Positions 1,482-20,833 of a DNA stretch of 64,000 nt are shown piece by piece; the stretch's first letter is position 1, and every line of letters starts with the position of its first letter. The notes beneath the pieces were generated by a model. That model saw nothing but the letters and a program-made list of their open reading frames with translations, ran no database searches and was not told the DNA's origin. The translations under genes were made by a program, and so were the position numbers. The stretch lies in the NCBI RefSeq assembly GCF_022045235.1, contig NW_027266275.1, positions 24,180,001 to 24,244,000 of the forward strand, in the 5' to 3' direction. Source of the DNA: Haliotis cracherodii (Eukaryota).

Positions 1482-1992
1482 ATGGCAACTCACGAAGCCT
1501 ACCTCCGCAAATCAAGAGACACTGTTATTCCTCCAGGAAGGGATCCAGGACATCAAGACCGTCAGCGCAGAAATCATGTTCCTAGATCGTTGGGCGACTC
1601 GAAACAGTTCCATGCCTACTTCTGCCAGGATAATCTCGATTCCATTTGGACGAGAAAGCTCATTGATGAATTGGAAGGGAGTCATGGCTTTAAATGTGCC
1701 GAGTACCACAGGGACTTGGTGGTAGGAGAAAGGGTTCTAGATTTAATGACTATGTTCATTTTCACATCGGATAGAATCGTCTTCATTCTATCTGAGAATT
1801 TTCTTAAGTCGAATTATGCTATGTATCAACTTCAGCTGGCCGTGCAGTATGACATTGACCACGACACAAACAACATAGTGGCACTCCACGTGGACGAGTG
1901 TAGAGTGCCGTCAGAGCTGTTGACATTTCAGATCATTGACACAAAGTCTCGTGGGTGGAAGGACATATTCATGGACTATTTGAAGAAACCGG
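1482..1992 (+). CDS. TIR-SH3-SH3 protein, coding exon 1 (TIR domain)
   Basis: ATG at 1482 in acaATGG context. The translation has a TIR pattern (FHAYFCQD, RDLVVG, RIVFILSENFLKSNYAMYQL, VPSEL). GTAAGT donor at 1993, phase 1. Confidence 0.88.
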
Positions 1993-2176
1993 GTAAGTCA
2001 TCCTACCTTTAACACAACACGCACTGTACACCAGGTTAGTTCGCTGCACAGTGGAAATACTCGAACATCGATATAAGATTGCATTAACATATTTAGACCT
2101 ATGCATTGATACATTTAAAAAGTGTTGAGTAATTGAGTAAAGATTACCAGGAAATCAAATATATACGTGCCCTACT

Positions 2177-2445
2177 AATCTATGCTATACAATATACACA
2201 AGACGTTTTACTCCATATCGTTCACACGATATACACAAGACATATTACTCTATACCGTTCACACAAAATACACAAGACGTATTACTCTGTACCGTTCACA
2301 CAATATACACAAGACGTATTACTCTGTACCGTTCACACAATATACACAAGACGTATTACTCTATACCGTTCACACAATATATACACGGTCTTTTACTATT
2401 TTTCGTTTACACAATATACAAACGACATATCCTATTACTCTGTGC
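2177..2445. repeat. 37-bp minisatellite, about 7 copies
   Basis: Units start at 2248, 2285, 2322 and 2359 (ctctRtaccgttcacacaatatacacaagacgtatta). Confidence 0.9.
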
Positions 2446-3879
2446 TACGTACCCGTGAAGATCCGGGGTAGAATATGTCTTCAGCAAACCATGCTTGCCG
2501 TAAAAGGCGACTATGCTTGTCGTAAGAGGCGAGTAAGGGAATCGGGTGGTCAGGTTTGATGACTTGGTTGATGCACATCAACATGTATCAACATTGCGTG
2601 GAGCGATGCTCATGATGTCAAACACTGGATTGTCTGATCCAGAGTCGATTATTAACAGACCGTCGTCATATAGCTGGAGTGGATATGATGACGTGTATGC
2701 ATGAACCCAGTCAGTGAGCCTGACCACGGAATCCCGTCAGTCGCCTCTTACAAGCACGGGTTGCTGAACACCAGTTCTAACCCGGATCTTCATGGGGGTA
2801 TTTTATCATACTTATCCAGGTAATTTCATTGGTTCATTCCAACACTACATGGGAGCCTTGTTTTATATTTATATCATACGAAATAACCAAATTACTTCCT
2901 TTTTGCGGGAAAACACGATGCGGGCTGCTTGTACTAGTCCGGAGTGAAGCCGATGTATAGTGCTAGCCCACTGAGATACCATGCCGCAGTTTAACATGAA
3001 TACCCCACTCAGACACAGTATACTGACTCCGAGCCGACCAGTCCTTGTTTTAGCCCCTTAATGCCGAGCGCCAGACAGGGTAAAAACAAGTACCATCTTT
3101 TAACGTCTTTTGGTATGACGCGGTCGGGGATCGCTCTACCACTAGACCATGGAGGCGGTCCTACGTACAATGGAATCTGTTCAGCACATAATTGACTGTT
3201 TATTCTCTGGCGTTGACGTTTTGATGTAGTGGCTTTTTCAAACAGTCCAGGTTGAGATGAACTTGTATTACCCTCAGGCATGCTGACTATTTACACCAAT
3301 ATACATAGGAAGCTCAGTGTGTGTTGGGCATTATTCGTTGTCCCCTGTCTTTTCAAATAGTTTAAACCTTGGTACAGATGTCATAATCAAAGGTCAAGGT
3401 TCCCCGCATTCATAAGTGAACTGACTACGCTAATTACGTCAATGCAGTATACATTCGGAAGTGAAATCTGCAAAAATCTCCCTTTAGAGAATTGTTTGGT
3501 CAGTGTGCAGTGAGTGTTTCAACTAATACTAAGGTATAGCCCCAATGCGTAATGTGAGAGAGTGAGTGAGTATGGTTTTACGTCGCTTTTAGCAATATTC
3601 CAGCAATATCACGACAGGGGACACCAGAAATGGGCTTCACACATTGTACCCATGTGCCATGTGTGCAATCGAACCTGGGTATTCGGCGTGACGAGCGAAC
3701 GCTTTAACCACTAGGCTACCCCACCGCTCTCAATACGTAATATACATCATGAAGTTAATGCAAGCATGAAATTAATGCGAGAAACACGAGTGGCGCATTA
3801 TCATGCCATATTGGACGTATATGCACGTGAGTCCTGCAAAACACACATACATATAAAAGATTTTTGTTATGGTATTGAA

Positions 3880-4740
3880 ATAATATGATAATAAAAGCGA
3901 CAAAGCCCTTTCTATAAGAAATATCTGCAAAAGTCGATTTACGATTTACTATATCATGATCATGTGTTCATGAATCACTATCAAATAGTGATGATGCCAG
4001 GTGTTCGCGAAAAGGTGTGCGCATCCTGTGCCACCAATGGCACCCGTCACAAACAAATGCAAAGGCAAGTCAATTCTTCACCTAATAACACAAGAAGATA
4101 TGGTACCAAATAGGGAATTGCATCGGACATAATTTGTGTCACTGATCCGTCAATTTTGGGAATGTCCTCTACATGTCTATCTTAAAACATTTTGAAAGCT
4201 TTACTGAGGCCTGGAATGTTGTAATGATGAAACACCTTCTGAGCAAGAGAGGTTTGACGCTCTTTGAAATCTTGGTAGAAAGAGCATGCTCGGTTGTATC
4301 TCAAAAGTTGTGAAATGTAGACTCCAAGGGCTGCAGCTTCAGGAAGATAGTTCGACATAAAGGAAAGTTTACCTTTGGAAATTTGCACAACCATCTTGTC
4401 ACACAGTCTTGTGGGGAGTGTTTTGTCACTCCGAATCTTTATGCATAGATCTAAGTATGAAACAGATGATGCGGTCTCACTGGTCTCCTTTATTTCAAGT
4501 TCAGGTGGGTAATAACGTGGAAAGGAATTGGCTATTTGATGGTTATTGAACGATATCAGATTATTAATATTCTGATTTGCCATTTCAAGCAGAAATTCTG
4601 AAATGTCTGAAATTCTGATTGGCGCCCATGGGAATGCCTACTTCTTGCCTAAATGTCTTACCCCCAAATTTTACATAGATAATATCAATGTCCAACATTT
4701 CACAATAGTGTTTTCTCAGTAAACGTCAGATGGCATTTGC
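3880..4740 (-). mobile_element. Penelope-like (Naiad/Chlamys-type) RT remnant with 3' region
   Basis: RQEVGIPMG (about 4625-4652), YPPELEIKET, SYLDL, GVYISQLLRY. The same 3' region recurs at about 17990-18145, 28500-28855, 32870-33340 and 39170-39495. Confidence 0.75.
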
Positions 4741-6217
4741 TTTCATTTTTGACAAATTGACCTGAACCTCTGAACATAGATAACTGTATGTATGATCACA
4801 ACGGTTTGTGCAAAAAAATCCCATGGCCCAAGGAATGCAATTTCCCCTAAAGTTTGTCATGTTGGATAGTGGTGTACAAATTTGAAAAATCAAATGTTTC
4901 GACACAATGAATCTGGTTCTTTTTTGAGATTGTAAAATGGCAAGCAAATCCTTTGAGTTTTTGAGAACCCACGTGGTAATAATTCCACTTGTCTCAGATA
5001 CTCTCTGACCCGTGAAGATCCGCGGTAGAATAGGTCTTCATCAACCCATGCTTGCAGTAAAAGGCGACTATGCTTGTCGAAAGAGGCCACTAACGGGATC
5101 GGGTGGTCAGGCTCGCTGACTTGGTTGATGAATGTCATCGTATCCCAATTGCGTGGATCGATGTTCATGATGTCAATCAATGGATTGTCTGGTCCAGTCT
5201 GGATTATTTTCAGACAGCCGTAATATAGCTGGAATATTGCTGAGTGCGGCATTAAACAAAATGAAACAAACAAACGAAAACAGATACTCTCTATAAAGAA
5301 CCGCCTCCGTGGTCTAGTGGTAGAGCGTCCGCCCGGAGGGGTGAAGGTCCGGGGCAGAATGGGTTTTGTTCCATTTTTGTTTCCTCTTTTGCACTTTGTG
5401 CATTCTACCTATGACAACATCACGCACGGACTTAACCATGGTTTATTTATTCATAATGGCATCATAACAATGTGTAATAGTTTGAACATGTACGGAAACG
5501 CATTTTGAAAACTAATACCATTACTTATTTTTACATTTTAGCGATACTGATTTAACAATCCTCCCTGTACATAATAAATCATTTCTCAAGACGCTTTGTA
5601 ACGCCGTTTGACGCGTACTGAGACAAAAGGAAACCAACACCTCACATGGTCTTTTCCTTTCAAACTGCTTTGGGAACACTGGGGAATAACCAGACATCTC
5701 ACCAAAGCTTGTGTGCCGAACATACAAAATGCAAGAAAACACTTGTTTGAATTAAGGTAAATATGTTTTTAGTAATACAAAAATTGGCATCTTCAGAATA
5801 CTTCCGCGTCTTTATCCTAATTAAACATCAGGTCTTTTAAAAACATGGAATGAGGTGCGTCAAGTAAATATGATTAGGAAGAAGGCGATCACAGTTACGT
5901 TTGCCTTTTGATATGGTTCATGGAGTGAGTGAGTGAGTTTAGTTTTACGCCGCTCTTAGCAATATTCAAGCAATATCACGGCGAGGGACACCAGAAATGG
6001 GCTTCACACATTGTACCCATGTCGGGAATCGAACCCGAGTCTTTGGCGTGACGAGCGAACGCTTTAACCACTAGGCTACCCGACCGGCCCTATGTTACAT
6101 GGAATGTGGATAATTGTAGCGTATATTATGTTCCAGCACCGATGATGCCAGCCAAAATATGCACTTATGGATGTGAGTAGACATTTTACGATGTGATTTT
6201 TCTTCATATATATCTAA

Positions 6218-6547
6218 GGCCACACATTTTTTTTATTTTTCGTTTCACGGGCCTGCCGCTCATACTGCAGAGCAACCGGAAAAGAAATCAGTTATACATA
6301 ATTTATTTTTATTATATCTCCCGCTAGTAATATAGAACCTCACTAAAAAGATTTTCTTATATAAATGCCATGTTTACATCACTATCGGTGATTCAAGTAG
6401 CCAGCTGCAGTTTTAACCCCACAGCAGAATGATTTTCATTAAAAAAAAAAAAAATGATAGGCATAGCTATTTTTTTTTTTTTTGGACCGATCTTGTGTGG
6501 AAAAGCTGGAATAAATCCGCGAAACATATAATTTAAAAGGTGTGGCC
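6218..6547. mobile_element. MITE, PIF/Harbinger-like
   Basis: TIR GGCCACAC...GTGTGGCC flanked by a TAA/TAA TSD. Confidence 0.6.
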
Positions 6548-6628
6548 TAAAAGTTATAAATCTTAATTCACGCCATTGTTATGTATGTAGCACACACCTC
6601 TCAGGTGTAATTCTTTTTATCGTTGTAG

Positions 6629-6738
6629 CACATGTCAGTGTTACAGACTTATGCAAAACTAATAGGTCAGTGATGTCAGAGCCACCAACGCTGAAAGCAA
6701 CTCTCCGTATCCCTGACAACATCAGACGTAGGATCAAG
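6629..6738 (+). CDS. TIR-SH3-SH3 protein, exon 2 (linker)
   Basis: Acceptor ttctttttatcgttgtag. Phase-1 entry gives the open frame AHVSVTDLCK...NIRRRIK. Donor AAG|GTATGG, phase 0. Confidence 0.7.
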
Positions 6739-7829
6739 GTATGGTGCCAAATAAAAAATAGTCATCAAATACACACGTCACACATATTACGTAAAATATG
6801 TATTTGCTCTTTGCTTTTGTTGCCATCAGTCACACACCAGTACATATACTGTTGTATCATTCGCCTAACCTACCAAATTATATCTTGCATAATATCAGTT
6901 TTATTCACAGTACTTATAGGTGTCCGCCACATTTGATTCTGGATAGCATTGCGTGATGAATATTCATTGAACGTGTGGGTAGTGTGAACTAATTATTTGT
7001 GAGTCAGTACGGTTTTATATGTAATCTTACGTACCAAGAAACACTGAGAAATGTACTCGTATATATATTATGTATAGCCATGTAGCAAAGGATATGACAC
7101 TTGTTTACAATTTTAAGCGTGTATTACTTACGAAGTGCGTTCTCCATTGAAGTTCACATTTATTATAGAAGTTATTAAAGCTGCTCTAACGTCTTGAAAT
7201 CACGACGTTTACGTTAATCACATTCGGATCTGTTCTACCGATGTTATTAATTTTGGGGAAATTCATATGTCGATCCTATTGATGTTGTGAAAATGAAAGT
7301 TACATAGCTGCACATACGCGTTAAATCCTGTGTAAAAATTCTTTGAGAATACTGACAGATAGTGTTGTGTACTGTTAGATGTTATTTCAGTAAAAAATGT
7401 CATTGTATTCTGAAGAAGAAGATTGCTATAACATCGCTTTGTACAGCGCTGTATTAATATCAGAGCAATATCATACCCAGCATATGAAGCATGCATATAT
7501 AAGGGTGTAATATTCTTTGGACCTCCTCCGTAGTGTAGTGGATAGAGCGCTCCTGGAAAGCGGATGGTTGGTGGTTCGATCCCCGGCCTCGTCATACCAT
7601 AAGACGTTAAAAGATGATACGTGTTGTATTCCTGCTCGGCGATCGGCAATTGGGGGATAAAACAATGACTGGTCGGCACAGGCAAGGACGCACGCACGCC
7701 ATATAAGTGCAATAATCTTGCTAAAAAGTGCAATAATCTTGAACGCGACGTGTAACCCCATTACAACTCACCACAACTTCCAATGGTTCTCTAGATCCCG
7801 GGTTCTGATGTTTGATGCATGTATTACAG

Positions 7830-7886
7830 ATCTGGCACAGATCCCAGTCCCTGGGCGACACACAGCTGCGGAAAGCAACAACCCAA
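7830..7886 (+). CDS. TIR-SH3-SH3 protein, exon 3 (short linker; could be skipped without a frameshift)
   Basis: Acceptor tattacag, 57 nt (IWHRSQSLGDTQLRKATTQ), donor CAA|GTGAGT, phase 0/0. Confidence 0.55.
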
Positions 7887-8523
7887 GTGAGTATCCTCAT
7901 CAGTTGGGGTAAGTGATTCATTCACGTGTAACTATTCCACATATCACTTCAATCAAAGTCTACAGAGTCATGACACGGTTGAATTGTAACATGTCCCAAG
8001 CGCTCTAAACTCAACGGATCTCGAGGGGTATATAGTGTGATGTACCCCGTGCGTTAGCCCATGTACCCCGATCCGTTAGGCGAGGGTACAAAGTCTCACA
8101 CACAGGGCACATCACATCATATGCCCCGACTGATCGGTCGACAACGAATTTTTCTCCCCAACATTCATTCAAACAGGTCCGGAATATAATTTTGTTCCCA
8201 GTTTCTCCGAGTAAGCAAAACCCGTGTCAGACGAAACGAGTTACTTCCCTTTACCCATTGCATTCGGATAAACATCGGTTCATTTCACCTGTGGGTTTCA
8301 AAAAAAGGGAAACTTCTACGACCTACATCGAACTGACGCACCTTGATATAACTGCAATAATGTTGCTTCCTCACTCGCTACTCTTTTAATGTGGACTTAA
8401 AGTAAAGTCTAACTTTTAAAGTCAACATGTAACCCCATGGGGGCTGAGATATTACATTTTTGTAGAACAAACTGTAAACGTCCCCGCATGTACTGACCGC
8501 TTACCACTTATCTGATTCATCAG

Positions 8524-9219
8524 AGTAGCAGCCCTGTCAGCCTGACTACTGAGAGCAGTACCGACCTAGACGATCAACAGATGGAGGATACAGTGCTAGT
8601 AGGAGCTGAGGATACAGTGAATGTACAGTATTCCTGGAAGCGGGTGACCAAACCACAGGCTACATTGTTGCATGCCCTCAACATACGCGTGAAGGGGGGA
8701 TTCGTGTACGAGGCGAGAGAGTCACGGCTGACTGACAATGAGGATGAACTGAACGTTGAAGAAGGAGACGTGTTAGAAATGTTACACGATGAACCCACTC
8801 ATGGTAATATGTACAAGTGTAAAAATGCTCAAGGACATGTTGGTTTTGTGCCTAATTCGCTGATGTCGCCATCTTTCTATTTGCTCCCCTCTCAAATTGT
8901 AAAACAGTTCAAACAAACAATATCAAATTCTGAAAATGAAATGTTCAGAAAGGAACTTGAACGACTTGGAATTTCCTACTTCGTTGCCACCGGGGAAAAT
9001 CGGGGGGATGCTGTGTACTTATCTGTCAAAAGGAAGGATGTTTTGGTACAAGTAGCAACAAGAAACGCAGGTCGAGCTGTTTTCAAAAACTGTAGAAATG
9101 AAACAGGTTACCTACCCATTTCGCTCACTGAATACGTAAATGTCGAAAAACCCTACTTAGGGTTAGGAATCTCGGCTCTGTTCAACATGGGAAGGGAGAG
9201 TTTTGAATCAGAGGCGTAA
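8524..9219 (+). CDS. TIR-SH3-SH3 protein, last exon (two SH3-like domains)
   Basis: Acceptor gattcatcag, phase 0, in frame with ORF 8581-9219. SH3-1 about 8701-8871 (DELNVEEGDVLE...GHVGFVPNSL). SH3-2 about 8977-9138 (LSVKRKDVL...ETGYLPISL). The joined CDS is 1374 nt, 457 aa. Confidence 0.8.
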   Translation, partial: SSSPVSLTTESSTDLDDQQMEDTVLVGAEDTVNVQYSWKRVTKPQATLLHALNIRVKGGFVYEARESRLTDNEDELNVEEGDVLEMLHDEPTHGNMYKCKNAQGHVGFVPNSLMSPSFYLLPSQIVKQFKQTISNSENEMFRKELERLGISYFVATGENRGDAVYLSVKRKDVLVQVATRNAGRAVFKNCRNETGYLPISLTEYVNVEKPYLGLGISALFNMGRESFESEA

Positions 9220-9509
9220 CACAAGAGGGACAGCATAACGGATAGCTGTGCCTCGTGCCCATCTGTGTTACGATGGAGTAGAGCTCTGCTCCTGGTCAAT
9301 CTATTACGATGGCACATAGTTGTGGCTAATTCTTCTAGTGGTACCATGGTACATAGCTGTCTCATGCTCAGTGGTGTTACTATGGCACGTGTCTGTTCCT
9401 CGTGATCAGTAGTGTTTCCGTGGCACAGTTTATTGCACTTATGATATTTGTGCAGCTCTGACAAAAGCTTTTTTCCTGATTGAAAATACACCGACTGTCA
9501 AATCTGATG

Positions 9510-9768
9510 ATGAGAATGGCAGTGACATCTCTCCCACCTATAACATCTGCAAATTAAGAGAAGTGTTATTCCTTGAGGACATCAAGACTGTCAGCGCAAT
9601 AATCATGTTCCTAGATCGCTGGACGACTCGAAATGATTCCCTGCTTACGTCAGTCAGGATACTCTCGATTGGAGAATTGGAAGGATGTCATGCGCCGAGT
9701 ACCACAGAGACTTTGTGGTAGGAGAAAGGGTTCTAGATTGAATGACTATGACATTTTCACATCGGATT
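9510..9768 (+). pseudogene. Decayed duplicate of the TIR exon 5' half
   Basis: Nucleotide match to about 1480-1772 (aatcatgttcctagatcg; gtggtaggagaaagggttctagatt), with deletions and stops. Confidence 0.8.
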
Positions 9769-10274
9769 AACACGTAAAGATGTCTTGTGCTTGTTCTATC
9801 AGCATGGGAGAATACCGCCCGTATCATTACGCTCTCACTGCCATATCCATCGATCTGCGGTTTGCGGAAAAACGTTAATACGTCGGTACACACTGGCCCT
9901 AAAGTCAGATCTTCGAAATCCTGGAGTTGTTGCTGTATGGCTTAGCCAAGTTAGATGATGTACCTCTTTCGCATAGTATGTGTTAATGTCTTTCATCTTT
10001 CTGTTTTTCGCAAGGGCATATTTTGACAGTGATCAATGAAGTCATCCGTTTATAAGAAATTCGAAATAAACAAAACTCACAATTAAGTACTTTTCTTTGC
10101 AAAAGGAAAATATTTTGTCTCTAAAACGTACACAACCTATTCTGTCGTTTGTATGTTTCTGTACATATGGGTTGGATGTCGATATCATCGATAGTTTTGT
10201 ACCACTACTGTTAAGTAAATACGCCATTGTATTCCAGTATGTTTGTTCGAGTTTGTTGTCACCTATACTTGCCG

Positions 10275-11066: not shown

Positions 11067-12708
11067 ATGACAGACACACGCATCATCTCACACGCAGACA
11101 CCCCAGATCCTGACTTACCCACACCCGCGGAAGCGCACAACACCTCCGGGAGGACAGTCGAAAACATTGTTCCGGACGAGTATGGCTCAGACATGGAACA
11201 TACCACCCCCACCAAACCAGCCAACTCACCTCCACAATACACAAACCCCAAAAAACGTAAGCTCGACTCATCCACTCCACCACCTTCTCCCACACCCACC
11301 CCGGCTTCCTTCATCACCACCTTCGCGCTATACTTCTTCGCCGCAGGCTCAGCATCAATCCTAACTAAACAACTCTCAGCAGACAGGATAGGTTTATGGT
11401 TTAAACGCGAAAAAATCCATTACAGCAACATCAAAAAAGCAAATAAAGGTTACCAAATAATATTCCCAAATCAAGATTCATTCAATGCAGCTAAAAAAAT
11501 AGTACAAATTTTTCACGTAACCGTAACAAAACAAATTCCAAATTGGCAGCAATTCACCCGAGGGGTAATAAGAGTAAACCCTAGAGAAACAGCCGAAGAC
11601 CTAGAACTCTACACCCAAGAAGCAAACACAAATCAATACCCTCAACCCCAAATAACAAGCACCCGCAGGATAACAACAAACAGAAACGGCAAAACGGTCC
11701 CTACATCAATCGTTATTGTAAACTTCAAAAAAACGGCTAAATTTCCTGAAGCCCCTAATCACATCTCTTTCGGTGCCCACACTAAACTAGAAGTTAAACC
11801 ATACATCAAACAGGTCAAACAATGTTCTAACTGCCTTAGATATAACCACACGGCCACCCAATGTACATTCAAAAAAACTAAATGTAAAAAATGCGCCCAA
11901 ACCGATTGCCCAGGTACATGCTCTCCCTGGTGCATCCATTGCAAATGCATAAAACATACATCACTCTCAAACCAGTGTCCGCACAGACATGCCCTAACAC
12001 AACAGGCCAACAAACACATAAACATAGATTCGGCCAAAATCCAAACAAGAAAATATGCACCACCTACATCCAAACCTCTCCTCCCCACACCACACTCAAA
12101 CACCACACACAAACTCTCGGATTCAATCTGGGGCAACCACATAGAAACCGCACCCACCACTTCCACACATCACCTCACACAGCCACCTACCAACTCCCCC
12201 ATAACATCAACACCCGCATGCAAAGCAAACAGCAAAACCACAGACACACAACGACCCTCAGCCAGACACTCTACAGCCCACAAGGCAACAACACTTCCCC
12301 ACAAGCAACCACAAAAAAAAAAACTCAAACACTGAGGAAACCACAGCTACACCCAACACGCAAGCACAAACTCAACACCCCACACCACAAACACCTCCAC
12401 AGGCCTCCCCAATGAAAACTCAAACAATAAAAACCAACCTAACCGACGAAGACGAGTATTCTTCCACCGAGGAAATAAATGAAATCACTTTCTCAGCCCC
12501 TAAAACCAACAAAAACTTCAGGCGCAAAAATCCTCAATTAACCAGCACTAAAACTCTTAATAACCTCACACTACTCCTAGCCTACATGCATAAGCAAAAC
12601 TCACCAAATGCTAGTATTAAAGCTTTTCACTCAGTAGCACAAAAACTAAAACTCACAACTCTCTCCTTTGAGTTATTTCTCTCCCAACTTAGGGAAGCTA
12701 CCAATTAA
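11067..12708 (+). CDS. LINE ORF1 (gag-like), split by a +1 indel in the A11 run at 12313-12323
   Basis: CSNCLRYNHTATQC knuckle plus two further Cys clusters, and a PKKRK NLS. Removing one A joins ORF 11067-12335 to the frame ending at 12708 (about 546 aa). Confidence 0.8.
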
Positions 12709-12755
12709 ACAAAACCTAAAACTCAAAACAAACTAATAACCTCTCATCCCCCAAA

Positions 12756-15700
12756 ATGGAAGGACTAAATATATTTCAGTGGAACGCCAACGGATTAGCC
12801 TCCCACGGCAAGGAGTTAAAAGCTAAATTCAAACGAGACAAAGGTCCACACATAGTCTGTATACAGGAAACTAAATTCTCTACCAGATCTAAATTCACCC
12901 TACCAAACTATAACTCAATAAGAACTGACCGAGCCAAAACAAACCCAGGTAGAGCCGGAGGCGGCCTAATCATATACGTCAGGGAAGATTTAAGCTACAA
13001 AGAACTAAAAATAAACACACCGAACCTAGAAGCAAACGGTATCCAAATAACAAATAACAACCAAAAAATTAATATCATAAATATATACCACTGGGTAGAA
13101 AAACAGGTCAAACCTGAGGATTTAAACACCCTCCTCCAAATAGGCAATAAATCTACAATCTTCCTAGGAGACTTTAATGCCCACCACCCTACCTGGGGTA
13201 TAGAAGATAAAATAGATAAACACGGAAAACTCATCTCAGAATGGATAGAACAAAATGACCTAATACTACTAAATAACAACCAACCTACTAGATACGACAA
13301 AATACACCACAAAATGTCGGCTATCGACTTAACCATATGCACCCCAGATTTAGCCCAAAGTATTCAATGGGAAGTACACGGGGTACCACTAGGTAGTGAC
13401 CACTTCCCCATAAATATAACTATAGGAGACGTAAACATCCCATCACCAGCCCCAAACCAGGAACCTAAATTCCACTACAACAAAGCCGACTGGGACAAAT
13501 TTCAGGACATTTGCAACCAGGCTAACCTAGCTGACCTAGAAAGTAACGACCCCGAAATCTACTGTAAAAACCTCACTGACTATATAATAAACGCAGCTAA
13601 AAACTCCATTCCTTTCAAAACAACCAGCATAGGCAAACCCTCGGTTCCTTGGTGGAACGAGGAGATAGAACAAACGAGGCGTAAACGCAAATCCGCATTC
13701 AATAAAGCCAAACGTGACTTCAAACACCTAAAGATAGCACATGAACTAAATCACAAAGTACAAAGCTTAGTTAAAACAGCTAAAACAAGAGACTGGAAAA
13801 AATTTTGCGAAGAAATTAACCATCATACAGACGCCAGAACAGTTTGGCGCAAAATCCACGCCATTAGGGGCATTAAACGTCATAAAAAAACTCCCAACGT
13901 AAACAATTCAACAAACCCCACTGAAAAAGCTAATAACCTAGCAAATCACTTCTCGGCCGTCAGTAGCAATAGCAACTTCAACCAAAAATTCCAGGAACAA
14001 CTAAAAGCAGAAACCAAATTTACCAAAGAGCCAAAAGATAATAACCTAGAAATTAATCTCCATTTCACAATGGAAGAACTACTCCACGTCCTACAAAATA
14101 GGAAAAAGGGCACAGCCCCAGGCTTAGACCTTACTTCATACCAGATAATTAAACAACTACCACCCAAACTACTCCAAACTCTTCTGAAACTCTATAACCT
14201 CATATATCTAAACGGACAGGTCCCATCACCTTGGAAACAAGCCCTGGTCATACCAATCCCCAAACCCAATAAACCAGCTGACCAGGCTAATTCATACAGA
14301 CCAATCTCCCTAACTTCTAACTTATGCAAAGTAATGGAATCAATGGCCAAAAACAGGTTACAACACTACTTAGAACAAAACAACATAATAAATCCAGACC
14401 AAAGCGGTTTCACTCCTGGACGCTCAACCTTAGATAACCTCGCCCGACTAGAGCAGGACATTAAAACAGGCCAACTTAACAAACAATATACTACAGGCAT
14501 CTTTCTAGACTTCTCCAAAGCATTCGACATGGTTTGGCATAACGGGCTAATACAAAAACTTAAAAAAATAGGACTTAAAGGTCAAATAATTAACTACATC
14601 CAAAGTTTCCTAACAAACCGCAAAATCACCGTGGGCATAGACCAAACGCTATCGGACCAATGTCCCCTAGAAAATGGCACTCCCCAGGGCAGCATCCTAA
14701 GCCCAACACTCTTCAATATTATGATTAACGATTTATTCGAGGGACTATCCCCCAAAGTAAACACATCAAAATTCGCGGATGATGGAGCCCTCTGGATCCG
14801 CACTAAAAGCATTAAAATGGCCCAAAACTTACTACAAAAATCTCTAAATAAAATACAAAAATGGGCTGACAAATGGGGCTTCTCCCTAAACTCAGAAAAA
14901 ACCACAGGAATAGTATTTAAACACAAAAATATGCAACCCGCCACCCTAAACCTCCAACTAAACAACAAACCAATCAAATTCCAAAAACAAACCAAATTCT
15001 TAGGATTAATCTTCGATGAACATCTCACCTGGGATGCTCACATTAAAAACCTTGTAACCAGATGCAGCAAAGACCTAAACACGTTAAGATGCCTAACCGG
15101 CTCCAACTGGGGGGCCTCTAAAAACACCCTCCTCTCACTCTATATATCACTAATTAGGTCCAAACTAGACTATGGCAGTGCCATTTACGACACCTTAAAC
15201 AACTCTCTCATTAAAAAACTAGACTCAATCCAGTATCAGGCCCTAAAACTAATCACACGAACTCAACATGGCACCTCTTCCACCTCACTCCAGGCCTTAA
15301 CAGGAGAAATGCCACTTAAACTACGTAGGGAACAACTTACCCTAAACTTCTGGGCTGCGTCCCAATCAAACCCACTAATCGAAAACTTAATAAAACAAAA
15401 TATTAGCCCTAGAAACCAAGCCCTAGCCCGGAAACATCCACTACTTACTCCAATTTCCCAAAGAATAACCAATTACCTAAACGAACACAAAATAAATAAT
15501 CTTAAACAAAACAATAAATCATCCAATATCTTCACTCCAAAACTTAAAATACCAAAAATAGACACAACACTAGCCGATACACTAAATAAACAGACCGATC
15601 CTAACATCGCTAAAACCACCACACTAGCATACATACATGAACATTGGCCAAATTGGTGTCACATATACACAGACGGATCCTCAGATCCGATCTCAAAACA

Positions 15701-16514
15701 CACAGGTTTCGGAGTCCACATCGCACAACCAACCAAAGACACACAATCTTACCGACTCCCAAACAACCAATCCATATTCACGGCCGAACTAATGGGCATG
15801 GCCTCAGCACTACACAATCAGCAATCTAAAACACACCAAAAAATCCTCATCCTAACCGACTCTCTCAGTGGACTACAAGCCCTCAAAAATAAAAACACTA
15901 AAAACCGCCCCAAACTAATAAATCAAATACTCAATAGCTCAAACAACTTAACTAAGGTAGGTAAACAAATAGAGTTCATTTGGATCCCCGCCCACGTAGG
16001 AATCTTTGGAAATGAAAAGGCAGATAAAGCAGCAAAATTATCCCTTAAACTCCCAGAAATAAGCTTAAACTTACCCAGCTCAAAATCAGAAATCAAAAGT
16101 GTCACTAAACAAAAAATTAACAAAAAATGGCAAAATATATACCAAAACTCAAATAGCCAAATCAGGAAAGTACTCAAAAAAAACCTAAATAAACCCAAAA
16201 TACTACACCCATCCAAAAAAATCGACAGAATAATTACCAAACTACAAACAGGCCACACCAAACTAAATAATCACCGTAAAATAGCTAAACTACACACAAC
16301 AGGAAACTGCCCACATTGCAAACAACAAGAAACACCAGAACACGTACTCATTCACTGCACACACTACCAAACACACCGAACAACACTACAGACCACCCTA
16401 AATCTTAAAACCGGACTTACACTAGAATCAATCCTAAATCCACAAAATAAATTAGAAAAATTCAAAGCCTTAGGCATATACCTAATAAAAACAGGACTAA
16501 TTAGTCGCATTTAA
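12756..16514 (+). CDS. LINE ORF2 polyprotein: APE endonuclease, reverse transcriptase, RNase H, CCHC
   Basis: QWNANG/IQET/GDFNAHH/SDH (APE); PQGSILSP and FADD (RT); YTDGS, AEL, LTDS, WIPAHVGIFGNEKAD (RNase H); CPHC...EHVLIHC. Uninterrupted 1252 aa. Confidence 0.96.
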   Translation: MEGLNIFQWNANGLASHGKELKAKFKRDKGPHIVCIQETKFSTRSKFTLPNYNSIRTDRAKTNPGRAGGGLIIYVREDLSYKELKINTPNLEANGIQITNNNQKINIINIYHWVEKQVKPEDLNTLLQIGNKSTIFLGDFNAHHPTWGIEDKIDKHGKLISEWIEQNDLILLNNNQPTRYDKIHHKMSAIDLTICTPDLAQSIQWEVHGVPLGSDHFPINITIGDVNIPSPAPNQEPKFHYNKADWDKFQDICNQANLADLESNDPEIYCKNLTDYIINAAKNSIPFKTTSIGKPSVPWWNEEIEQTRRKRKSAFNKAKRDFKHLKIAHELNHKVQSLVKTAKTRDWKKFCEEINHHTDARTVWRKIHAIRGIKRHKKTPNVNNSTNPTEKANNLANHFSAVSSNSNFNQKFQEQLKAETKFTKEPKDNNLEINLHFTMEELLHVLQNRKKGTAPGLDLTSYQIIKQLPPKLLQTLLKLYNLIYLNGQVPSPWKQALVIPIPKPNKPADQANSYRPISLTSNLCKVMESMAKNRLQHYLEQNNIINPDQSGFTPGRSTLDNLARLEQDIKTGQLNKQYTTGIFLDFSKAFDMVWHNGLIQKLKKIGLKGQIINYIQSFLTNRKITVGIDQTLSDQCPLENGTPQGSILSPTLFNIMINDLFEGLSPKVNTSKFADDGALWIRTKSIKMAQNLLQKSLNKIQKWADKWGFSLNSEKTTGIVFKHKNMQPATLNLQLNNKPIKFQKQTKFLGLIFDEHLTWDAHIKNLVTRCSKDLNTLRCLTGSNWGASKNTLLSLYISLIRSKLDYGSAIYDTLNNSLIKKLDSIQYQALKLITRTQHGTSSTSLQALTGEMPLKLRREQLTLNFWAASQSNPLIENLIKQNISPRNQALARKHPLLTPISQRITNYLNEHKINNLKQNNKSSNIFTPKLKIPKIDTTLADTLNKQTDPNIAKTTTLAYIHEHWPNWCHIYTDGSSDPISKHTGFGVHIAQPTKDTQSYRLPNNQSIFTAELMGMASALHNQQSKTHQKILILTDSLSGLQALKNKNTKNRPKLINQILNSSNNLTKVGKQIEFIWIPAHVGIFGNEKADKAAKLSLKLPEISLNLPSSKSEIKSVTKQKINKKWQNIYQNSNSQIRKVLKKNLNKPKILHPSKKIDRIITKLQTGHTKLNNHRKIAKLHTTGNCPHCKQQETPEHVLIHCTHYQTHRTTLQTTLNLKTGLTLESILNPQNKLEKFKALGIYLIKTGLISRI

Positions 16515-19372: not shown

Positions 19373-19525
19373 TGGGTGGGGAAGGCGGCAAAAATAATGA
19401 TACTCTTAGGATGATATTCTGTGAATAGTAATGATGCAAATATCAATGAATTGACCATGTGTTCGCCTTGCCAAGAACTATCTGACCCTTATTTTGTAGG
19501 TCCAAGGAGAGGTTGTGTGATCCTG

Positions 19526-20833
19526 ATGGCCGAAGGTAGAAGGGTTGTGTCCCTGCATGTTCTCGGATCTAAAGGATCGGGCAAATCTCTCTTCATACGA
19601 CAGCTGGCTAATACAAGACACTGCAAGAAGCTCAAACTTGGTAAGAGGTGTTATGTTGTTGAACTGGATCTGGAGACACTTATTGGAGTTCCAGTTCTTG
19701 TAAACATCACGGAGTACAGAGGTGTGAAGTCCAATGGAGCTCTTGCCTTTGCGTACCATAAGGCAGATGCGTGTTTACTGTTCTATGACAGAGAGGAAGC
19801 TGCTAGCTTTGATAGAGCACAAATGGGATATATCTGGTGTCATTATTTCATGATAGGGAATCCAAATACTTTTGTTGTGGGAAACAAATGTGATAGGTTA
19901 GACAGGAACGACGTTCGACTGGAGGCTGTAGATGCATTCATCAACAAGTTCGGACCAGTTAAGGGCCACTTTTCTGTATCAGCTGAAACTGGCTGCAATA
20001 TCAAACCGATGTTGGTTGATGTTCTTCAACAAGTTTTGGAAGAACGTTTTGTAATCAACAGTAGCCCAGCACAGCTAGAAGTGGCCCTTCGGAATAGTGA
20101 TCCCCACTCGGGAGTGCAAATCTATGCAGTTGAAGAAACAGCTGGTTTGTGTGTTATTGTTAACAACGACACTTTTGAAAACTTGCCGTATCGAGACGGG
20201 GCTGTTAAGGACGTAGAGAACATCGAATCCACATTTGGACCACTTGGATTTGATATGAGGTACATTGAGAACAAAGATGTTTCATCACTCATCAGGAGAA
20301 TGCACGATATATCTAAAATGGATCATACAATGAACAGTATGTTTGTCTGTTTCATCATGTCTCATGGATCACGCAACAGTATTCTGGGAGTAGACGGCCT
20401 GACAATCGACCTTGACAGACTAACATCGTTGTTTTCTGCCCAGCAGTGTCCTAGTCTAGCGGGGAAGCCCAAGCTGTTCATAATTCAGGCATGTCAGGGT
20501 TCCATGGTCCAATCACCAGCAAACGCTCATTCAGACTCTGCAGCAATTCCCGAAGTCACTCGAGAGAGACCAACTGTGCCGGAGTTCGGAGACCTTTTAA
20601 TAGCACATTCTACTATTACAGGATTTGTTGCGTATCGTTACCCCGACAGAGGTTCTCCGTTTATATCGACGCTGTGCAACAAAATTCAGAACTTTCCTGA
20701 GAATCACATGGTGGATATTCTGACCATGGTTAACGGGGAGGTTGCTGCTATGAACTTTGGAGGGTCATTTAAACAGATGCCAATGTTCCAGTCACGGCTT
20801 CGAAAGCGCCTGTACCTGAAGAGGTTGTCATGA
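19526..20833 (+). CDS. Ras/Rab-like GTPase domain fused to a caspase-8-like protease (435 aa from ATG 19526)
   Basis: P-loop GSKGSGKS (19565-19588), G4 VVGNKCD, G5 SVSAETG. Caspase GLCVIVNN, SHG (His 20363), GKPKLFIIQACQG (Cys 20492), p10 DLLIAHST...KQMP. Acceptor ttattttgtag at 19499 precedes the ATG. Confidence 0.92.
   Translation: MAEGRRVVSLHVLGSKGSGKSLFIRQLANTRHCKKLKLGKRCYVVELDLETLIGVPVLVNITEYRGVKSNGALAFAYHKADACLLFYDREEAASFDRAQMGYIWCHYFMIGNPNTFVVGNKCDRLDRNDVRLEAVDAFINKFGPVKGHFSVSAETGCNIKPMLVDVLQQVLEERFVINSSPAQLEVALRNSDPHSGVQIYAVEETAGLCVIVNNDTFENLPYRDGAVKDVENIESTFGPLGFDMRYIENKDVSSLIRRMHDISKMDHTMNSMFVCFIMSHGSRNSILGVDGLTIDLDRLTSLFSAQQCPSLAGKPKLFIIQACQGSMVQSPANAHSDSAAIPEVTRERPTVPEFGDLLIAHSTITGFVAYRYPDRGSPFISTLCNKIQNFPENHMVDILTMVNGEVAAMNFGGSFKQMPMFQSRLRKRLYLKRLS

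What the first reader, a model, noticed from the sequence alone, without database searches (positions are those of the whole stretch)
1482..9219. Cryptic 4-exon gene encoding TIR plus tandem SH3-like domains
Seen: the ORF track shows unrelated fragments, but canonical splice sites with matching phases (1, 0, 0) join them into a 457-aa frame. It contains an N-terminal TIR, a Ser/acidic linker and two SH3-like domains, with no TM, LRR or death domain. Both SH3s appear to lack the ligand-binding Trp (MYKC, AVFK) and the PxNY ending (PNSL, PISL). Established: the classical TIR adaptors (MyD88, MAL, TRIF, TRAM, SARM1) lack this layout. Inference: a novel cytosolic adaptor linking TLR-type TIR assemblies to non-PxxP partners.
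Basis: partly seen in the sequence, partly recalled or inferred. Interest (0 to 1): 0.8.

Follow-up and report, generated by a model that had tools for sequence, protein, structure and literature searches.

The report
Abalone TIR protein with two SH3s
This is a real, transcribed black-abalone gene for a cytosolic protein that joins a Toll-receptor-type TIR signalling domain to two unusual SH3 domains; it is already in RefSeq as an unnamed protein, occurs only in a few early-branching snail lineages, and nobody has studied what it does.

Summary
The RefSeq model of this locus (Haliotis cracherodii XP_071107847.1, 469 aa, "uncharacterized protein") matches them letter for letter.

Exon 1 is a Pfam-significant TIR. 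Exon 4 holds two SH3 folds, each preceded by a helix (AlphaFold pLDDT 83-93; VIA Z 8.9 and 9.3). Both lack the ligand-binding Trp and the PxNY Tyr, in every family member.

Spliced RNA contigs from two related abalones join exon 2, exon 3 and exon 4 and run on upstream of exon 2. The exon 1 junction itself was not covered.

The gene is the third of three tandem paralogues. The family was found only in gastropods: Haliotis, Gigantopelta, Patella and Lottia.

The TIR is closest to TLR1/2/6 TIRs and has Gln where NADase TIRs need Glu, so a scaffolding adaptor or regulator role is most likely. That role is untested.

It is a lineage-restricted domain shuffle of known parts, of moderate interest. 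I found no paper describing it. This scan had not noted it on other DNA.

The parts
1482..1992 (+). Coding exon 1: start codon, a basic disordered N-terminal tail (aa 1-42) and the whole TIR domain (aa ~43-168, nt ~1608-1985). It ends in phase 1 at CGG|GTAAGT.
   Evidence: Sequence. Pfam TIR_2 41.8 bits and TIR 27.4 bits. Identical to P0013 residues 1-170. Nearest solved sequences are TLR15/TLR2/TLR1 TIRs, E 5e-9. Foldseek TIR hits have prob 1.00.
6137..6172 (+). 36-nt microexon (phase 1 to 1) that completes the boundary Ala codon and encodes PMMPAKICTYG plus the first base of the Ser codon. It is probably a cassette exon.
   Evidence: Found by mapping the extra residues of RefSeq protein P0013. 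It is flanked by ttccAG and GTGAGT. The segment is conserved in Haliotis paralogues, Gigantopelta and Patella isoform X1, and absent from Patella isoform X2.
6629..6738 (+).
   Evidence: Splice sites. Exact match to P0013. Laid in spliced RNA contigs X3 record 22 and X7 record 27. Conservation.
7830..7886 (+). It holds the nearly invariant Trp221 at the end of a predicted basic helix.
   Evidence: Splice sites. Exact match to P0013. In both spliced contigs 59 nt (2 + 57) lie between the exon-2 and exon-4 pieces, and depth is seen in bin 7801-8000. It is skipped in H. rufescens LOC124120460 isoform X2.
8524..9219 (+). Last coding exon: Ser/Thr-rich acidic linker (aa 1-40 of the exon), helix + SH3-1, connecting helix, helix + SH3-2, a short tail and the stop codon.
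   Evidence: Sequence, translation. Exact match to P0013 239-469. AlphaFold2 pLDDT 83-93 over exon residues 41-210.
8650..8871 (+). Helix-preceded SH3-1 (helix at exon-4 residues 43-56, barrel at 61-116). It is NCK2/EPS8-like, with Met for the binding Trp and Leu for the PxNY Tyr.
   Evidence: Pfam SH3_2 27.3 bits. NCK2 SH3 E 6e-6, with aligned WW->MY and PKNY->PNSL. VIA Z 8.9, rmsd 1.5 over 62 residues to the IRSp53 SH3.
8926..9138 (+). Helix-preceded SH3-2 (helix at 135-148, barrel at 152-205). It is a divergent SH3 below Pfam detection, with Ala for the binding Trp and Leu for the Tyr.
   Evidence: VIA Z 9.2-9.3, rmsd 1.1-1.6 over 56-58 residues to the DNMBP and Hck SH3s, and all top 50 hits are SH3. 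Tandem-SH3 structures top Foldseek. The family profile hits the EPS8 SH3 at E 9e-4. There is weak internal similarity to SH3-1.
9220..9713 (+). 3' UTR, at least this long.
   Evidence: RNA contigs X3 record 22 (to 9474) and X7 record 29 (8838-9713) run on colinearly past the stop codon.
9558..9770 (+). Decayed partial copy of the TIR exon (about 83% nt identity to 1508-1780). It has deletions of 12, 23, 10 and 1 nt and in-frame stops. It lies in or next to the 3' UTR and is a remnant of the tandem duplications.
   Evidence: tblastn, DNA alignment, own-genome search showing 3 TGA stops inside. A similar remnant lies after paralogue A at C12:24168561-24168833.

Best explanation
**What it is (shown).** The locus is a genuine, transcribed, 5-coding-exon gene of the black abalone (RefSeq XP_071107847.1, 469 aa). 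It is the third of three tandem paralogues. It belongs to a small family found so far only in patellogastropod, vetigastropod and neomphaline snails.

**The protein (shown or predicted).** It is soluble and cytosolic, and is built as follows:
- a short basic tail;
- a TLR-type TIR domain;
- a conserved basic linker, encoded by three small in-phase exons that relatives splice alternatively;
- an acidic Ser/Thr-rich spacer;
- two SH3 domains, each with an N-terminal helix.

**How it most likely works (inferred).**
- The TIR is a non-enzymatic scaffold. It has Gln at the position of the NADase catalytic Glu.
- The TIR probably joins TIR-TIR assemblies nucleated by abalone TLR or IL-1R-like receptors.
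- The tandem SH3 module has lost the Trp and Tyr of the polyproline pocket in every family member yet remains under purifying selection. It probably recruits a partner that is not a canonical PxxP peptide.
- Whether the net effect is to propagate or to damp signalling is open.
For: **Gene model**
- Canonical splice sites.
- Exact identity of all pieces to RefSeq protein P0013.
- Spliced contigs from two relatives join 6629-6736 to 8524 onward, with 59 nt (2 nt of exon 2 plus the 57-nt exon 3) between the laid pieces.
- One of these contigs has 74 further nt upstream of exon 2, more than the 36-nt microexon can supply.

**Same architecture elsewhere**
- Ten other proteins from six species share it.

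**Domains**
- TIR by Pfam.
- SH3-1 by Pfam in the three black-abalone copies.
- Both SH3 folds at pLDDT 83-93, with Z 8.9 and 9.3 and only SH3 domains among the top 50 hits.
- Tandem-SH3 structures are the best Foldseek hits.
- The SH3-2 family profile finds EPS8 and NCK SH3 domains.

**Scaffold-type TIR**
- The best sequence matches are TLR1/2/6/10/15 TIRs. TLR2 'YEL' aligns to 'YQL' here. The family shows Q, V, Y or F at that column.

**Still functional**
- Open frames are intact in all three paralogues.
- dN/dS is 0.14-0.30 for the TIR and 0.34-0.53 for SH3-2.
- The H. rufescens orthologue is 95% identical.

**Cytosolic**
- No TM segment and no hydrophobic N-terminus.
Against: - No interaction, localisation or expression-response data exist. 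Function rests on domain identity alone.
- The exon 1 to microexon junction was not seen directly. The stretch laid began at 3801, and only one read-laying run of 6,000 letters was allowed.
- In Haliotis the BB-loop Pro of the RDxxPG box is Val (RDLVVG). From established knowledge of TLR2 and TLR4 mutants, that change can abolish adaptor recruitment.
- The dN/dS values come from three paralogues. Synonymous divergence is uneven along the gene (0.01-1.0), which suggests gene conversion and makes the ratios rough.
- The taxon range rests on one single-sequence phmmer search plus word-based searches. More distant relatives could have been missed.
- The runs used are labelled 'RNA?' by guess. That they are RNA is inferred from the intron-less contigs.
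Confidence: 0.6

Rival explanations
1. It is a negative regulator or decoy. The TIR docks onto receptor or MyD88 TIRs but cannot propagate the assembly. The SH3 tandem sequesters the complex or holds the protein auto-inhibited. In this reading it resembles the 'orphan TIR' and truncated-MyD88 inhibitors proposed for molluscs.
For: All Haliotis copies have Val in place of the BB-loop Pro (RDLVVGERV), whereas Gigantopelta, Patella and Lottia keep Pro. There is no death domain or other known downstream-coupling domain. The greenlip abalone survey suggests negative regulation for orphan TIR proteins (PMC11103948).
Against: The non-Haliotis members keep the Pro, so loss of the BB-loop Pro is not a family trait. 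The SH3 tandem is conserved under purifying selection. That fits an output module better than a passive plug. There is no functional test either way.
Confidence: 0.2
2. It has a non-immune scaffolding role. The SH3 tandem, which is NCK/EPS8/STAC-like, works in actin, endocytic or ion-channel complexes, and the TIR serves only as an oligomerisation module.
For: The nearest sequence relatives of both SH3s are NCK and EPS8. The best fold matches include the STAC, sorbin and Grb2 tandems. No immune-specific feature other than the TIR is present.
Against: Outside SARM1, animal TIR domains are known almost only from TLR/IL-1R pathways (established knowledge). The gene sits in a tandemly duplicated cluster with a fast-changing N-terminal tail, a pattern typical of immune genes. 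A caspase gene lies about 10 kb downstream.
Confidence: 0.12
3. It is an enzymatic TIR. In this reading it is an NAD+-cleaving executor like SARM1 or bacterial and plant TIRs, with the SH3 tandem as sensor or regulator.
For: The TIR also matches the oyster TIR-STING fusion (6wt6, E 2e-6) and prokaryotic SPARTA TIR-APAZ by fold.
Against: The column that aligns with the Glu of TLR2 'YEL' is Gln here and Q, V, Y or F across the family. By established knowledge that column is the catalytic Glu position of the SxWCxxEL motif in NADase TIRs. The closest sequences are receptor-type TIRs.
Confidence: 0.05
4. It is an annotation artefact. The TIR exon and the SH3 exon belong to separate transcripts and are joined only by gene predictors.
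For: The exon 1 donor is followed by an in-frame stop after 6 codons, so a TIR-only product is conceivable. Exon 4 has an internal ATG at 8581. The exon 1 junction was not directly observed.
Against: Spliced contigs in two species link exon 2, exon 3 and exon 4, and extend 38 and 74 nt upstream of exon 2. The same order of TIR, conserved linker and SH3 tandem recurs in six species and in three tandem paralogues, each with a TIR exon 7-8 kb upstream of its SH3 exon.
Confidence: 0.03

Closest known systems
Classical animal TIR adaptors (MyD88, MAL/TIRAP, TRIF, TRAM, SARM1)
   Same: It is a soluble cytosolic protein whose TIR domain is of the receptor/adaptor type. Pfam TIR and TIR_2 are significant. 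By fold it matches the TRAM, MyD88 and IL-1RAcP TIRs. Like MyD88, it has Gln at the position of the NADase Glu (established knowledge, compared).
   Different: It has no death domain, no PIP2-binding motif or myristoylation site, no RHIM, and no ARM or SAM. Its partner module is a tandem of SH3 domains, which none of the five adaptors has. TIR sequence similarity to MAL, MyD88 and TRAM is only marginal (E 0.01-0.6), so it is not an orthologue of any of them.
Invertebrate 'TIR-domain-containing' (TIR-DC / orphan TIR) proteins of molluscs and other phyla
   Same: It is a lineage-restricted, tandemly duplicated TIR protein without LRR or TM. Such proteins are generally proposed as alternative adaptors or regulators (PMC6321704, PMC9334734, PMC11103948).
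   Different: None of the architectures listed in the papers I could read combines a TIR with SH3 domains. Those papers list ARM-TIR, EGF-TIR, IG-TIR, TIR-TPR, orphan TIR and TIR-STING. The key catalogue, cited as reference 30 in PMC6321704, is not in the held library and could not be checked.
Tandem-SH3 adaptors (NCK, Grb2, STAC, sorbin/CAP, p47phox) and the EPS8 SH3
   Same: It has two consecutive SH3 barrels. SH3-1 is 40-50% identical to the NCK2 third SH3 over 41 residues. The SH3-2 profile hits the EPS8 and NCK1/2 SH3s. Tandem-SH3 structures are the top Foldseek hits.
   Different: Both domains lack the conserved Trp and the 3-10-helix Tyr that form the polyproline pocket. Each barrel is preceded by a helix. 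There is no SH2, C1, PX or SoHo domain. The relative orientation of the two barrels does not match the known tandems (rmsd 12-15 A over both).
Helically extended SH3 (hSH3) domains of ADAP/FYB
   Same: An N-terminal helix precedes each SH3 barrel in the model. There are weak Pfam hSH3 matches in several family members. From established knowledge, hSH3 domains also lack canonical PxxP binding and bind lipids.
   Different: All Pfam hSH3 scores are below the cut-off (at most 21.1 against 25.7). No ADAP structure appeared among the top fold matches. Whether the helices pack on the barrels as in ADAP was not examined.
Sea-anemone 'Novel Gene 3' (kinase-Roc/COR-SH3-death-TIR)
   Same: It is another animal protein in which SH3 and TIR domains occur together (PMC5094078).
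   Different: That protein is a large multidomain kinase/ROCO protein with one SH3 and a death domain. It is unrelated in layout, and the exhaustive search with the SH3 exon did not recover it.

Membership tests
TIR domain superfamily (Pfam PF13676 TIR_2 / PF01582 TIR) | Sequence match above the curated Pfam gathering score | tested here: met
   TIR_2 41.8 bits (cut-off 28) and TIR 27.4 bits (cut-off 21.3) on the exon 1 translation.
TIR domain superfamily (Pfam PF13676 TIR_2 / PF01582 TIR) | Flavodoxin-like alternating beta/alpha fold that matches solved TIR domains | tested here: met
   The model has strand-helix alternation over residues 43-168. Foldseek prob 1.00 to the TRAM, IL-1RAcPb, TLR1 and MyD88 TIRs, TM 0.50-0.63 normalised to the target. 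Model confidence is only moderate (pLDDT 50-82).
TIR domain superfamily (Pfam PF13676 TIR_2 / PF01582 TIR) | Box 2 / BB-loop RDxxPG with the conserved Pro | tested here: not met
   All Haliotis copies read RDLVVGE (Val for Pro). Gigantopelta (RDFTPGE), Patella (RDFRPNK) and Lottia (KDFNPSH) keep the Pro. This is a functional motif, not a requirement for membership.
NADase-type TIR (SARM1, plant and bacterial TIRs) | Catalytic Glu in the alpha-C helix (SxWCxxEL-type motif) | tested here: not met
   TLR2 'YEL' aligns with 'YQL'. The family column is Q, V, Y or F. The equivalence of this column with the catalytic Glu rests on established knowledge. It was not checked here by a direct alignment to SARM1.
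SH3 domain (Pfam clan; PF07653 SH3_2) | Sequence match above the curated cut-off | tested here: met
   SH3-1: SH3_2 27.3 bits against 21.8, and NCK2 SH3 E 6e-6. SH3-2 alone is not detected by Pfam. Its 8-sequence family profile reaches the EPS8 SH3 at E 9e-4, and most of the 32 hits listed are SH3 domains.
SH3 domain (Pfam clan; PF07653 SH3_2) | Five-stranded SH3 beta-barrel fold | tested here: met
   pLDDT 83-93. SH3-1: Z 8.9, rmsd 1.5 A over 62 residues. SH3-2: Z 9.2, rmsd 1.1 A over 56 residues. All top 50 of 48,161 chains are SH3 domains.
SH3 domain (Pfam clan; PF07653 SH3_2) | Canonical PxxP-binding pocket (the Trp that opens strand c, and the Tyr of the SNY / PxNY 3-10 helix) | tested here: not met
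   SH3-1 has Met for Trp and Leu for Tyr, aligned to NCK2. In SH3-2 the Trp column is Ala in this gene and the motif reads PISL. No family member has Trp at either site. This is a functional feature, not a requirement for the fold family.
Helically extended SH3 (Pfam PF14603 hSH3) | Sequence match above the curated cut-off | tested here: not met
   19.3 bits against 25.7 for this gene. The best in the family is 21.1.
MyD88 / death-domain TIR adaptors | Death domain joined to the TIR | tested here: not met
   No death-fold Pfam match at E up to 1 in any exon or at E up to 0.1 in the full RefSeq proteins.
Toll-like receptors | LRR ectodomain and a transmembrane helix before the TIR | tested here: not met
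   No LRR match. No TM-grade hydrophobic segment. The TIR lies 42 residues from the N-terminus.

The most novel reading that the evidence does not exclude
The family defines a new, gastropod-born output branch of TIR signalling. A TLR-type TIR is hard-wired to a tandem of helix-capped, Trp-less SH3 domains. These form a previously unrecognised SH3 subclass that binds something other than polyproline, for example a PxxDY-like motif, ubiquitin or membrane lipid. Alternative use of the three small in-phase linker exons would tune the coupling between the two ends.
Probability: 0.25. Interest if true: 0.55.

Novelty: new variant of a known kind. Interest (0 to 1): 0.38.

Why it matters
**Context.** Molluscs have very large and poorly understood sets of TLRs and TIR proteins. 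How signals leave those receptors beyond MyD88 is largely unknown.

**What this family offers.**
- A compact TIR protein whose only other module is a conserved SH3 tandem. That makes it a concrete, clonable candidate for an alternative adaptor or regulator.
- A natural case of SH3 domains that have kept the fold but given up the polyproline pocket.

**Why abalone.** Black abalone is an endangered species devastated by a bacterial disease, withering syndrome (established knowledge). Immune-pathway genes of this species therefore have some applied interest.

**Limits.** The finding stays within the well-known pattern of lineage-specific domain shuffling in invertebrate immune genes, and the gene is already annotated. 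It would be a useful lead for comparative immunologists rather than a surprise.

Tried and rejected
**Searches that gave nothing**
- The word-based protein search with exon 4 alone found nothing. Its length filter (127-404 aa) excludes the full-length relatives of 458-563 aa, and the 381-aa Patella relative inside that range was not picked up either. The exhaustive phmmer search then found the family.
- A word-based search with the family alignment added no new taxa.
- The ESM Atlas could not read the exon 4 sequence. With P0013 it gave no usable hit.

**Limits on the read evidence**
- Read laying allows 6,000 letters, and exon 1 to exon 4 spans 6,533. I chose 3801-9800 to anchor on the long exon. 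The 1992-to-6137 junction therefore stays unobserved.
- The microexon itself lies beside a high-copy repeat (5958-6090). Its use in the contigs could not be read.

**Literature**
- Searches for TIR-DC plus SH3, TIR-SH3 phrases, ecTIR-DC, and abalone or Aplysia TIR repertoires found no description of this architecture.
- The main TIR-DC catalogue is not held.

**Readings considered and rejected**
- Pseudogene: rejected, because the frames are intact and selection is purifying.
- hSH3 membership: rejected, because scores are below the cut-off.
- NADase TIR: rejected, because the Glu is missing.
- A recent TLR-derived TIR: rejected, because the next-best TIRs in the genome are at most 39% identical.
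- Tandem repeats as the cause of the composition skew at 10-18 kb: rejected, because it is a LINE.

**How the spliced model was handled**
All searches on window sequence were done exon by exon.
- Full-length analyses used the database protein P0013 as returned by the tools.

Full report
**Source and rules followed.** The window is G000:C12:24180001-24244000 of the black abalone, Haliotis cracherodii. Window sequence was searched exon by exon. Full-length work used the RefSeq protein that the database tools returned (P0013). No contig looked human. The 318 N in the window were left alone.

**The observation.**
- 1482-1992, followed by GTAAGT
- 6629-6738, between ttgtAG and GTATGG
- 7830-7886, between ttacAG and GTGAGT
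- 8524-9219, after tcAG

The phases are 1, 0, 0 as stated.

**Domain scans of the exons.**
- Exon 1 translates to a protein with a significant TIR (TIR_2 41.8 bits, TIR 27.4 bits).
- Exon 4 has a significant variant SH3 (SH3_2 27.3 bits) at exon residues 71-116.
- The second SH3 is not seen by Pfam.

**The gene is already modelled, with one more exon.**
- An exhaustive phmmer search of 1.84 billion representatives with exon 4 returned eight hits, five of them full-length relatives and the other three generic SH3 or repeat proteins.
- A follow-up search returned P0013. This is XP_071107847.1, 469 aa, 'uncharacterized protein [Haliotis cracherodii]'.
- All four translated exons occur in it exactly.
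- The 12 extra residues between exons 1 and 2 map to a 36-nt microexon at 6137-6172. It is flanked by ttccAG and GTGAGT and runs phase 1 to phase 1.
- The annotated gene therefore has five coding exons.
- Patella vulgata isoforms X1 and X2 differ by exactly this segment.
- H. rufescens LOC124120460 isoform X2 skips the next-but-one small exon.
- The three small linker exons thus behave as in-phase cassettes in relatives.

**Transcription and splicing.**
- Twenty runs, none on record as RNA, hold 24-57% of the 31-mers of exon 4, as expected for close relatives.
- I laid the contigs of four of these runs on 3801-9800.
- X3 record 22 (1,156 nt) matches 6629-6736 at its positions 39-146 and 8524-9474 at its positions 206-1156.
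- X7 record 27 (400 nt) matches 6629-6736 at 75-182 and 8524-8682 at 242-400.
- In both, the 59 unplaced letters equal 2 nt of exon 2 plus the 57-nt exon 3. Depth also appears in the 7801-8000 bin. Introns 3 and 4 are therefore removed as predicted.
- These contigs must be RNA-derived. That is an inference, since the runs are labelled 'RNA?'.
- Record 27 carries 74 nt upstream of exon 2, more than the 36-nt microexon. It must therefore reach a further upstream exon.
- Exon 1 lay outside the stretch I could lay, so the 1992|6137 junction itself is not shown.
- X7 record 29 runs colinearly from 8838 to 9713, so exon 4 is the terminal exon, with a 3' UTR of at least about 500 nt.
It does not exclude rare isoforms.

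**Structure of the C-terminal half.**
- AlphaFold2 was run on the exon 4 product with a 9-row family alignment. It gives pLDDT 83-93 for residues 41-210.
- The order of elements is: helix 43-56, barrel 61-116, short helix, helix 135-148, barrel 152-205.
- VIA-align compared the model with 48,161 representative chains. Only SH3 domains appear in the top 50.
- SH3-2 examples are DNMBP (Z 9.2, rmsd 1.1 A over 56 residues) and Hck (Z 9.2, rmsd 1.6 A over 58).
- The SH3-1 example is IRSp53 (Z 8.9, rmsd 1.5 A over 62).
- Foldseek ranks tandem-SH3 structures first: sorbin, STAC1-3, Grb2 and p47phox. About 150 columns are aligned.
- The high rmsd over both barrels shows a different mutual arrangement, or none that is fixed.

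**Sequence evidence for the two SH3 domains.**
- SH3-1 is closest to the third SH3 of NCK2 (E 6e-6). NCK2 'EWWKCKNARGQVGLVPKNY' is aligned to 'NMYKCKNAQGHVGFVPNSL'.
- An 8-sequence profile of SH3-2 reaches the EPS8 SH3 (E 9e-4), then EPS8L1, NCK1/2 and Grb2. EPS8 'WWKVRN' lies opposite the consensus 'rakvkN'.
- It holds for every family member, so this is an old, conserved property and not decay.
- Pfam hSH3 matches stay below the cut-off.

**The TIR.**
- The nearest solved sequences are the TIRs of TLR15/2, TLR1, TLR6 and TLR10 (E 5e-9 to 5e-6), and the oyster TIR-STING (E 2e-6).
- MAL, MyD88 and TRAM are only marginal.
- In the alignment with TLR2, 'SEWSKYEL' lies opposite 'SNYAMYQL'. That column is Q, V, Y or F in the family.
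- By established knowledge this is the position of the catalytic Glu of NADase TIRs (SxWCxxEL). MyD88 has Gln there too. An enzymatic TIR is therefore unlikely.
- Box 2 reads RDLVVGE in all Haliotis copies, so the BB-loop Pro is Val. Gigantopelta, Patella and Lottia keep the Pro.
- From TLR2 and TLR4 genetics (established knowledge) this residue matters for adaptor recruitment. That leaves room for a regulatory role in abalone.
- There is no TM-grade segment and no LRR or death domain.

**The linker.**
- Between the TIR and the SH3 tandem lies a conserved stretch: H-[VIL]-S, then R-S-x-x-S-[DE]-P-P-T, then I-P-[ED]-N-[IV]-[RK], then I-W-[HF]-[RK]. Ser196 and Pro201 are invariant and Trp221 is nearly so.
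- It has net charge +8.
- Part of it is predicted as a helix at low confidence.
- Its role is unknown. A docking motif or a membrane-facing basic helix are guesses.

**Family and genomic setting.** The own-genome search finds three complete copies in tandem on the + strand.

| Gene | TIR exon (C12) | SH3 exon (C12) | Protein |
|---|---|---|---|
| A | 24156262 | 24164420 | P0001 |
| B | 24169534 | 24177863 | P0011 |
| C (this gene) | 24181482 | 24188524 | P0013 |

- TIR exons are 88-92% identical in protein and SH3 exons 73-74%.
- Similarity between paralogues is confined to exons. Introns align only at dispersed repeats.
- Synonymous divergence is very uneven. It is 0.01-0.14 in the TIR and SH3-1 and 0.5-1.0 in SH3-2 and the tail.
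- That pattern suggests old duplicates with exon-limited gene conversion.
- dN/dS is 0.14-0.30 for the TIR and 0.34-0.53 for SH3-2. The N-terminal 42 residues give ratios above 1, on few sites.
- Decayed TIR-exon fragments lie after gene A (24168561-24168833) and after gene C. The latter is at window 9558-9770, with four deletions and three TGA stops. It sits within or next to the 3' UTR.

**Relatives in other species.**
- H. rufescens has all three genes. The orthologue of this one, XP_046339263.2, is 95% identical.
- H. asinina has two.
- More distant members are in Gigantopelta aegis (XP_041364767.1), Patella vulgata (two genes) and Lottia gigantea (V4BF27).
- No bivalve, cephalopod, higher gastropod or non-mollusc protein passed E 0.001 with the SH3 exon as query.

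**What is known.**
- I found no paper describing a TIR plus tandem-SH3 protein.
- Mollusc surveys list ARM-TIR, EGF-TIR, IG-TIR, TIR-TPR, orphan TIR and TIR-STING (PMC9334734, PMC11103948).
- In such surveys this family would be counted as 'orphan TIR'.
- A sea-anemone gene combines kinase, Roc/COR, SH3, death and TIR domains (PMC5094078), but it is unrelated in layout.
- The principal catalogue of invertebrate TIR-DC proteins is not in the held library, so prior mention there cannot be excluded.

**Verdict.**
It overstates how cryptic and how novel the gene is, and the function is untested.
- Most likely this is a non-enzymatic TIR scaffold protein of TLR-type pathways whose output or regulation runs through an atypical SH3 tandem.
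- It is a new variant of the known class of invertebrate TIR-domain-containing proteins, restricted to early-branching gastropods.
- Interest is moderate: a clean, clonable candidate, but one more case of immune domain shuffling.

Noticed in passing
window 11067-16514 (+): An apparently intact non-LTR retrotransposon (LINE). ORF1 is 422 aa with a Cys-rich knuckle. ORF2 is 1,252 aa and reads like endonuclease, reverse transcriptase and RNase H. It accounts for the strong negative GC skew and positive AT skew at 10-18 kb.
   Followed up: partly
window 9558-9770 and G000:C12:24168561-24168833: Decayed partial copies of the TIR exon lie just downstream of paralogue C and paralogue A. The one in the window has four deletions and three TGA stops, and RNA contig X7 record 29 covers it up to 9713 as 3' UTR. 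They look like leftovers of unequal crossing-over in the tandem array.
   Followed up: partly
paralogues at G000:C12:24156262-24165052 (L004/L002), 24169534-24178462 (L005/L003) and window 1482-9219: Synonymous divergence between the three paralogues is mosaic. It is 0.01-0.14 in the TIR exon and SH3-1, but 0.5-1.0 in SH3-2 and the tail, and the introns do not align at all. This suggests exon-limited gene conversion among old duplicates. The first 42 residues give dN/dS above 1, on few sites.
   Followed up: partly
window 2189-2420: A 37-bp tandem repeat of 6.3 copies with 88% matches lies inside intron 1. It produces the long spurious ORFs seen at 2133-2559.
   Followed up: no
window 5000-5350, 5920-6090 and 7400-7800: High-copy dispersed repeats in introns 1 and 3 have enormous summed contig depth in all four RNA-like runs. 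Joints and inserts contain tRNA-like letters (GGTTCGATCCCC), as expected of tRNA-derived SINEs. The element at 5958-6090 ends under 50 nt upstream of the microexon.
   Followed up: no
window 19421-20833 (+): A single long ORF of 470 aa lies about 10 kb downstream on the same strand. An earlier follow-up in this scan described it as a Rab-like GTPase fused to a caspase. The 3' UTR evidence here gives no sign that the TIR-SH3 gene splices into it.
   Followed up: no
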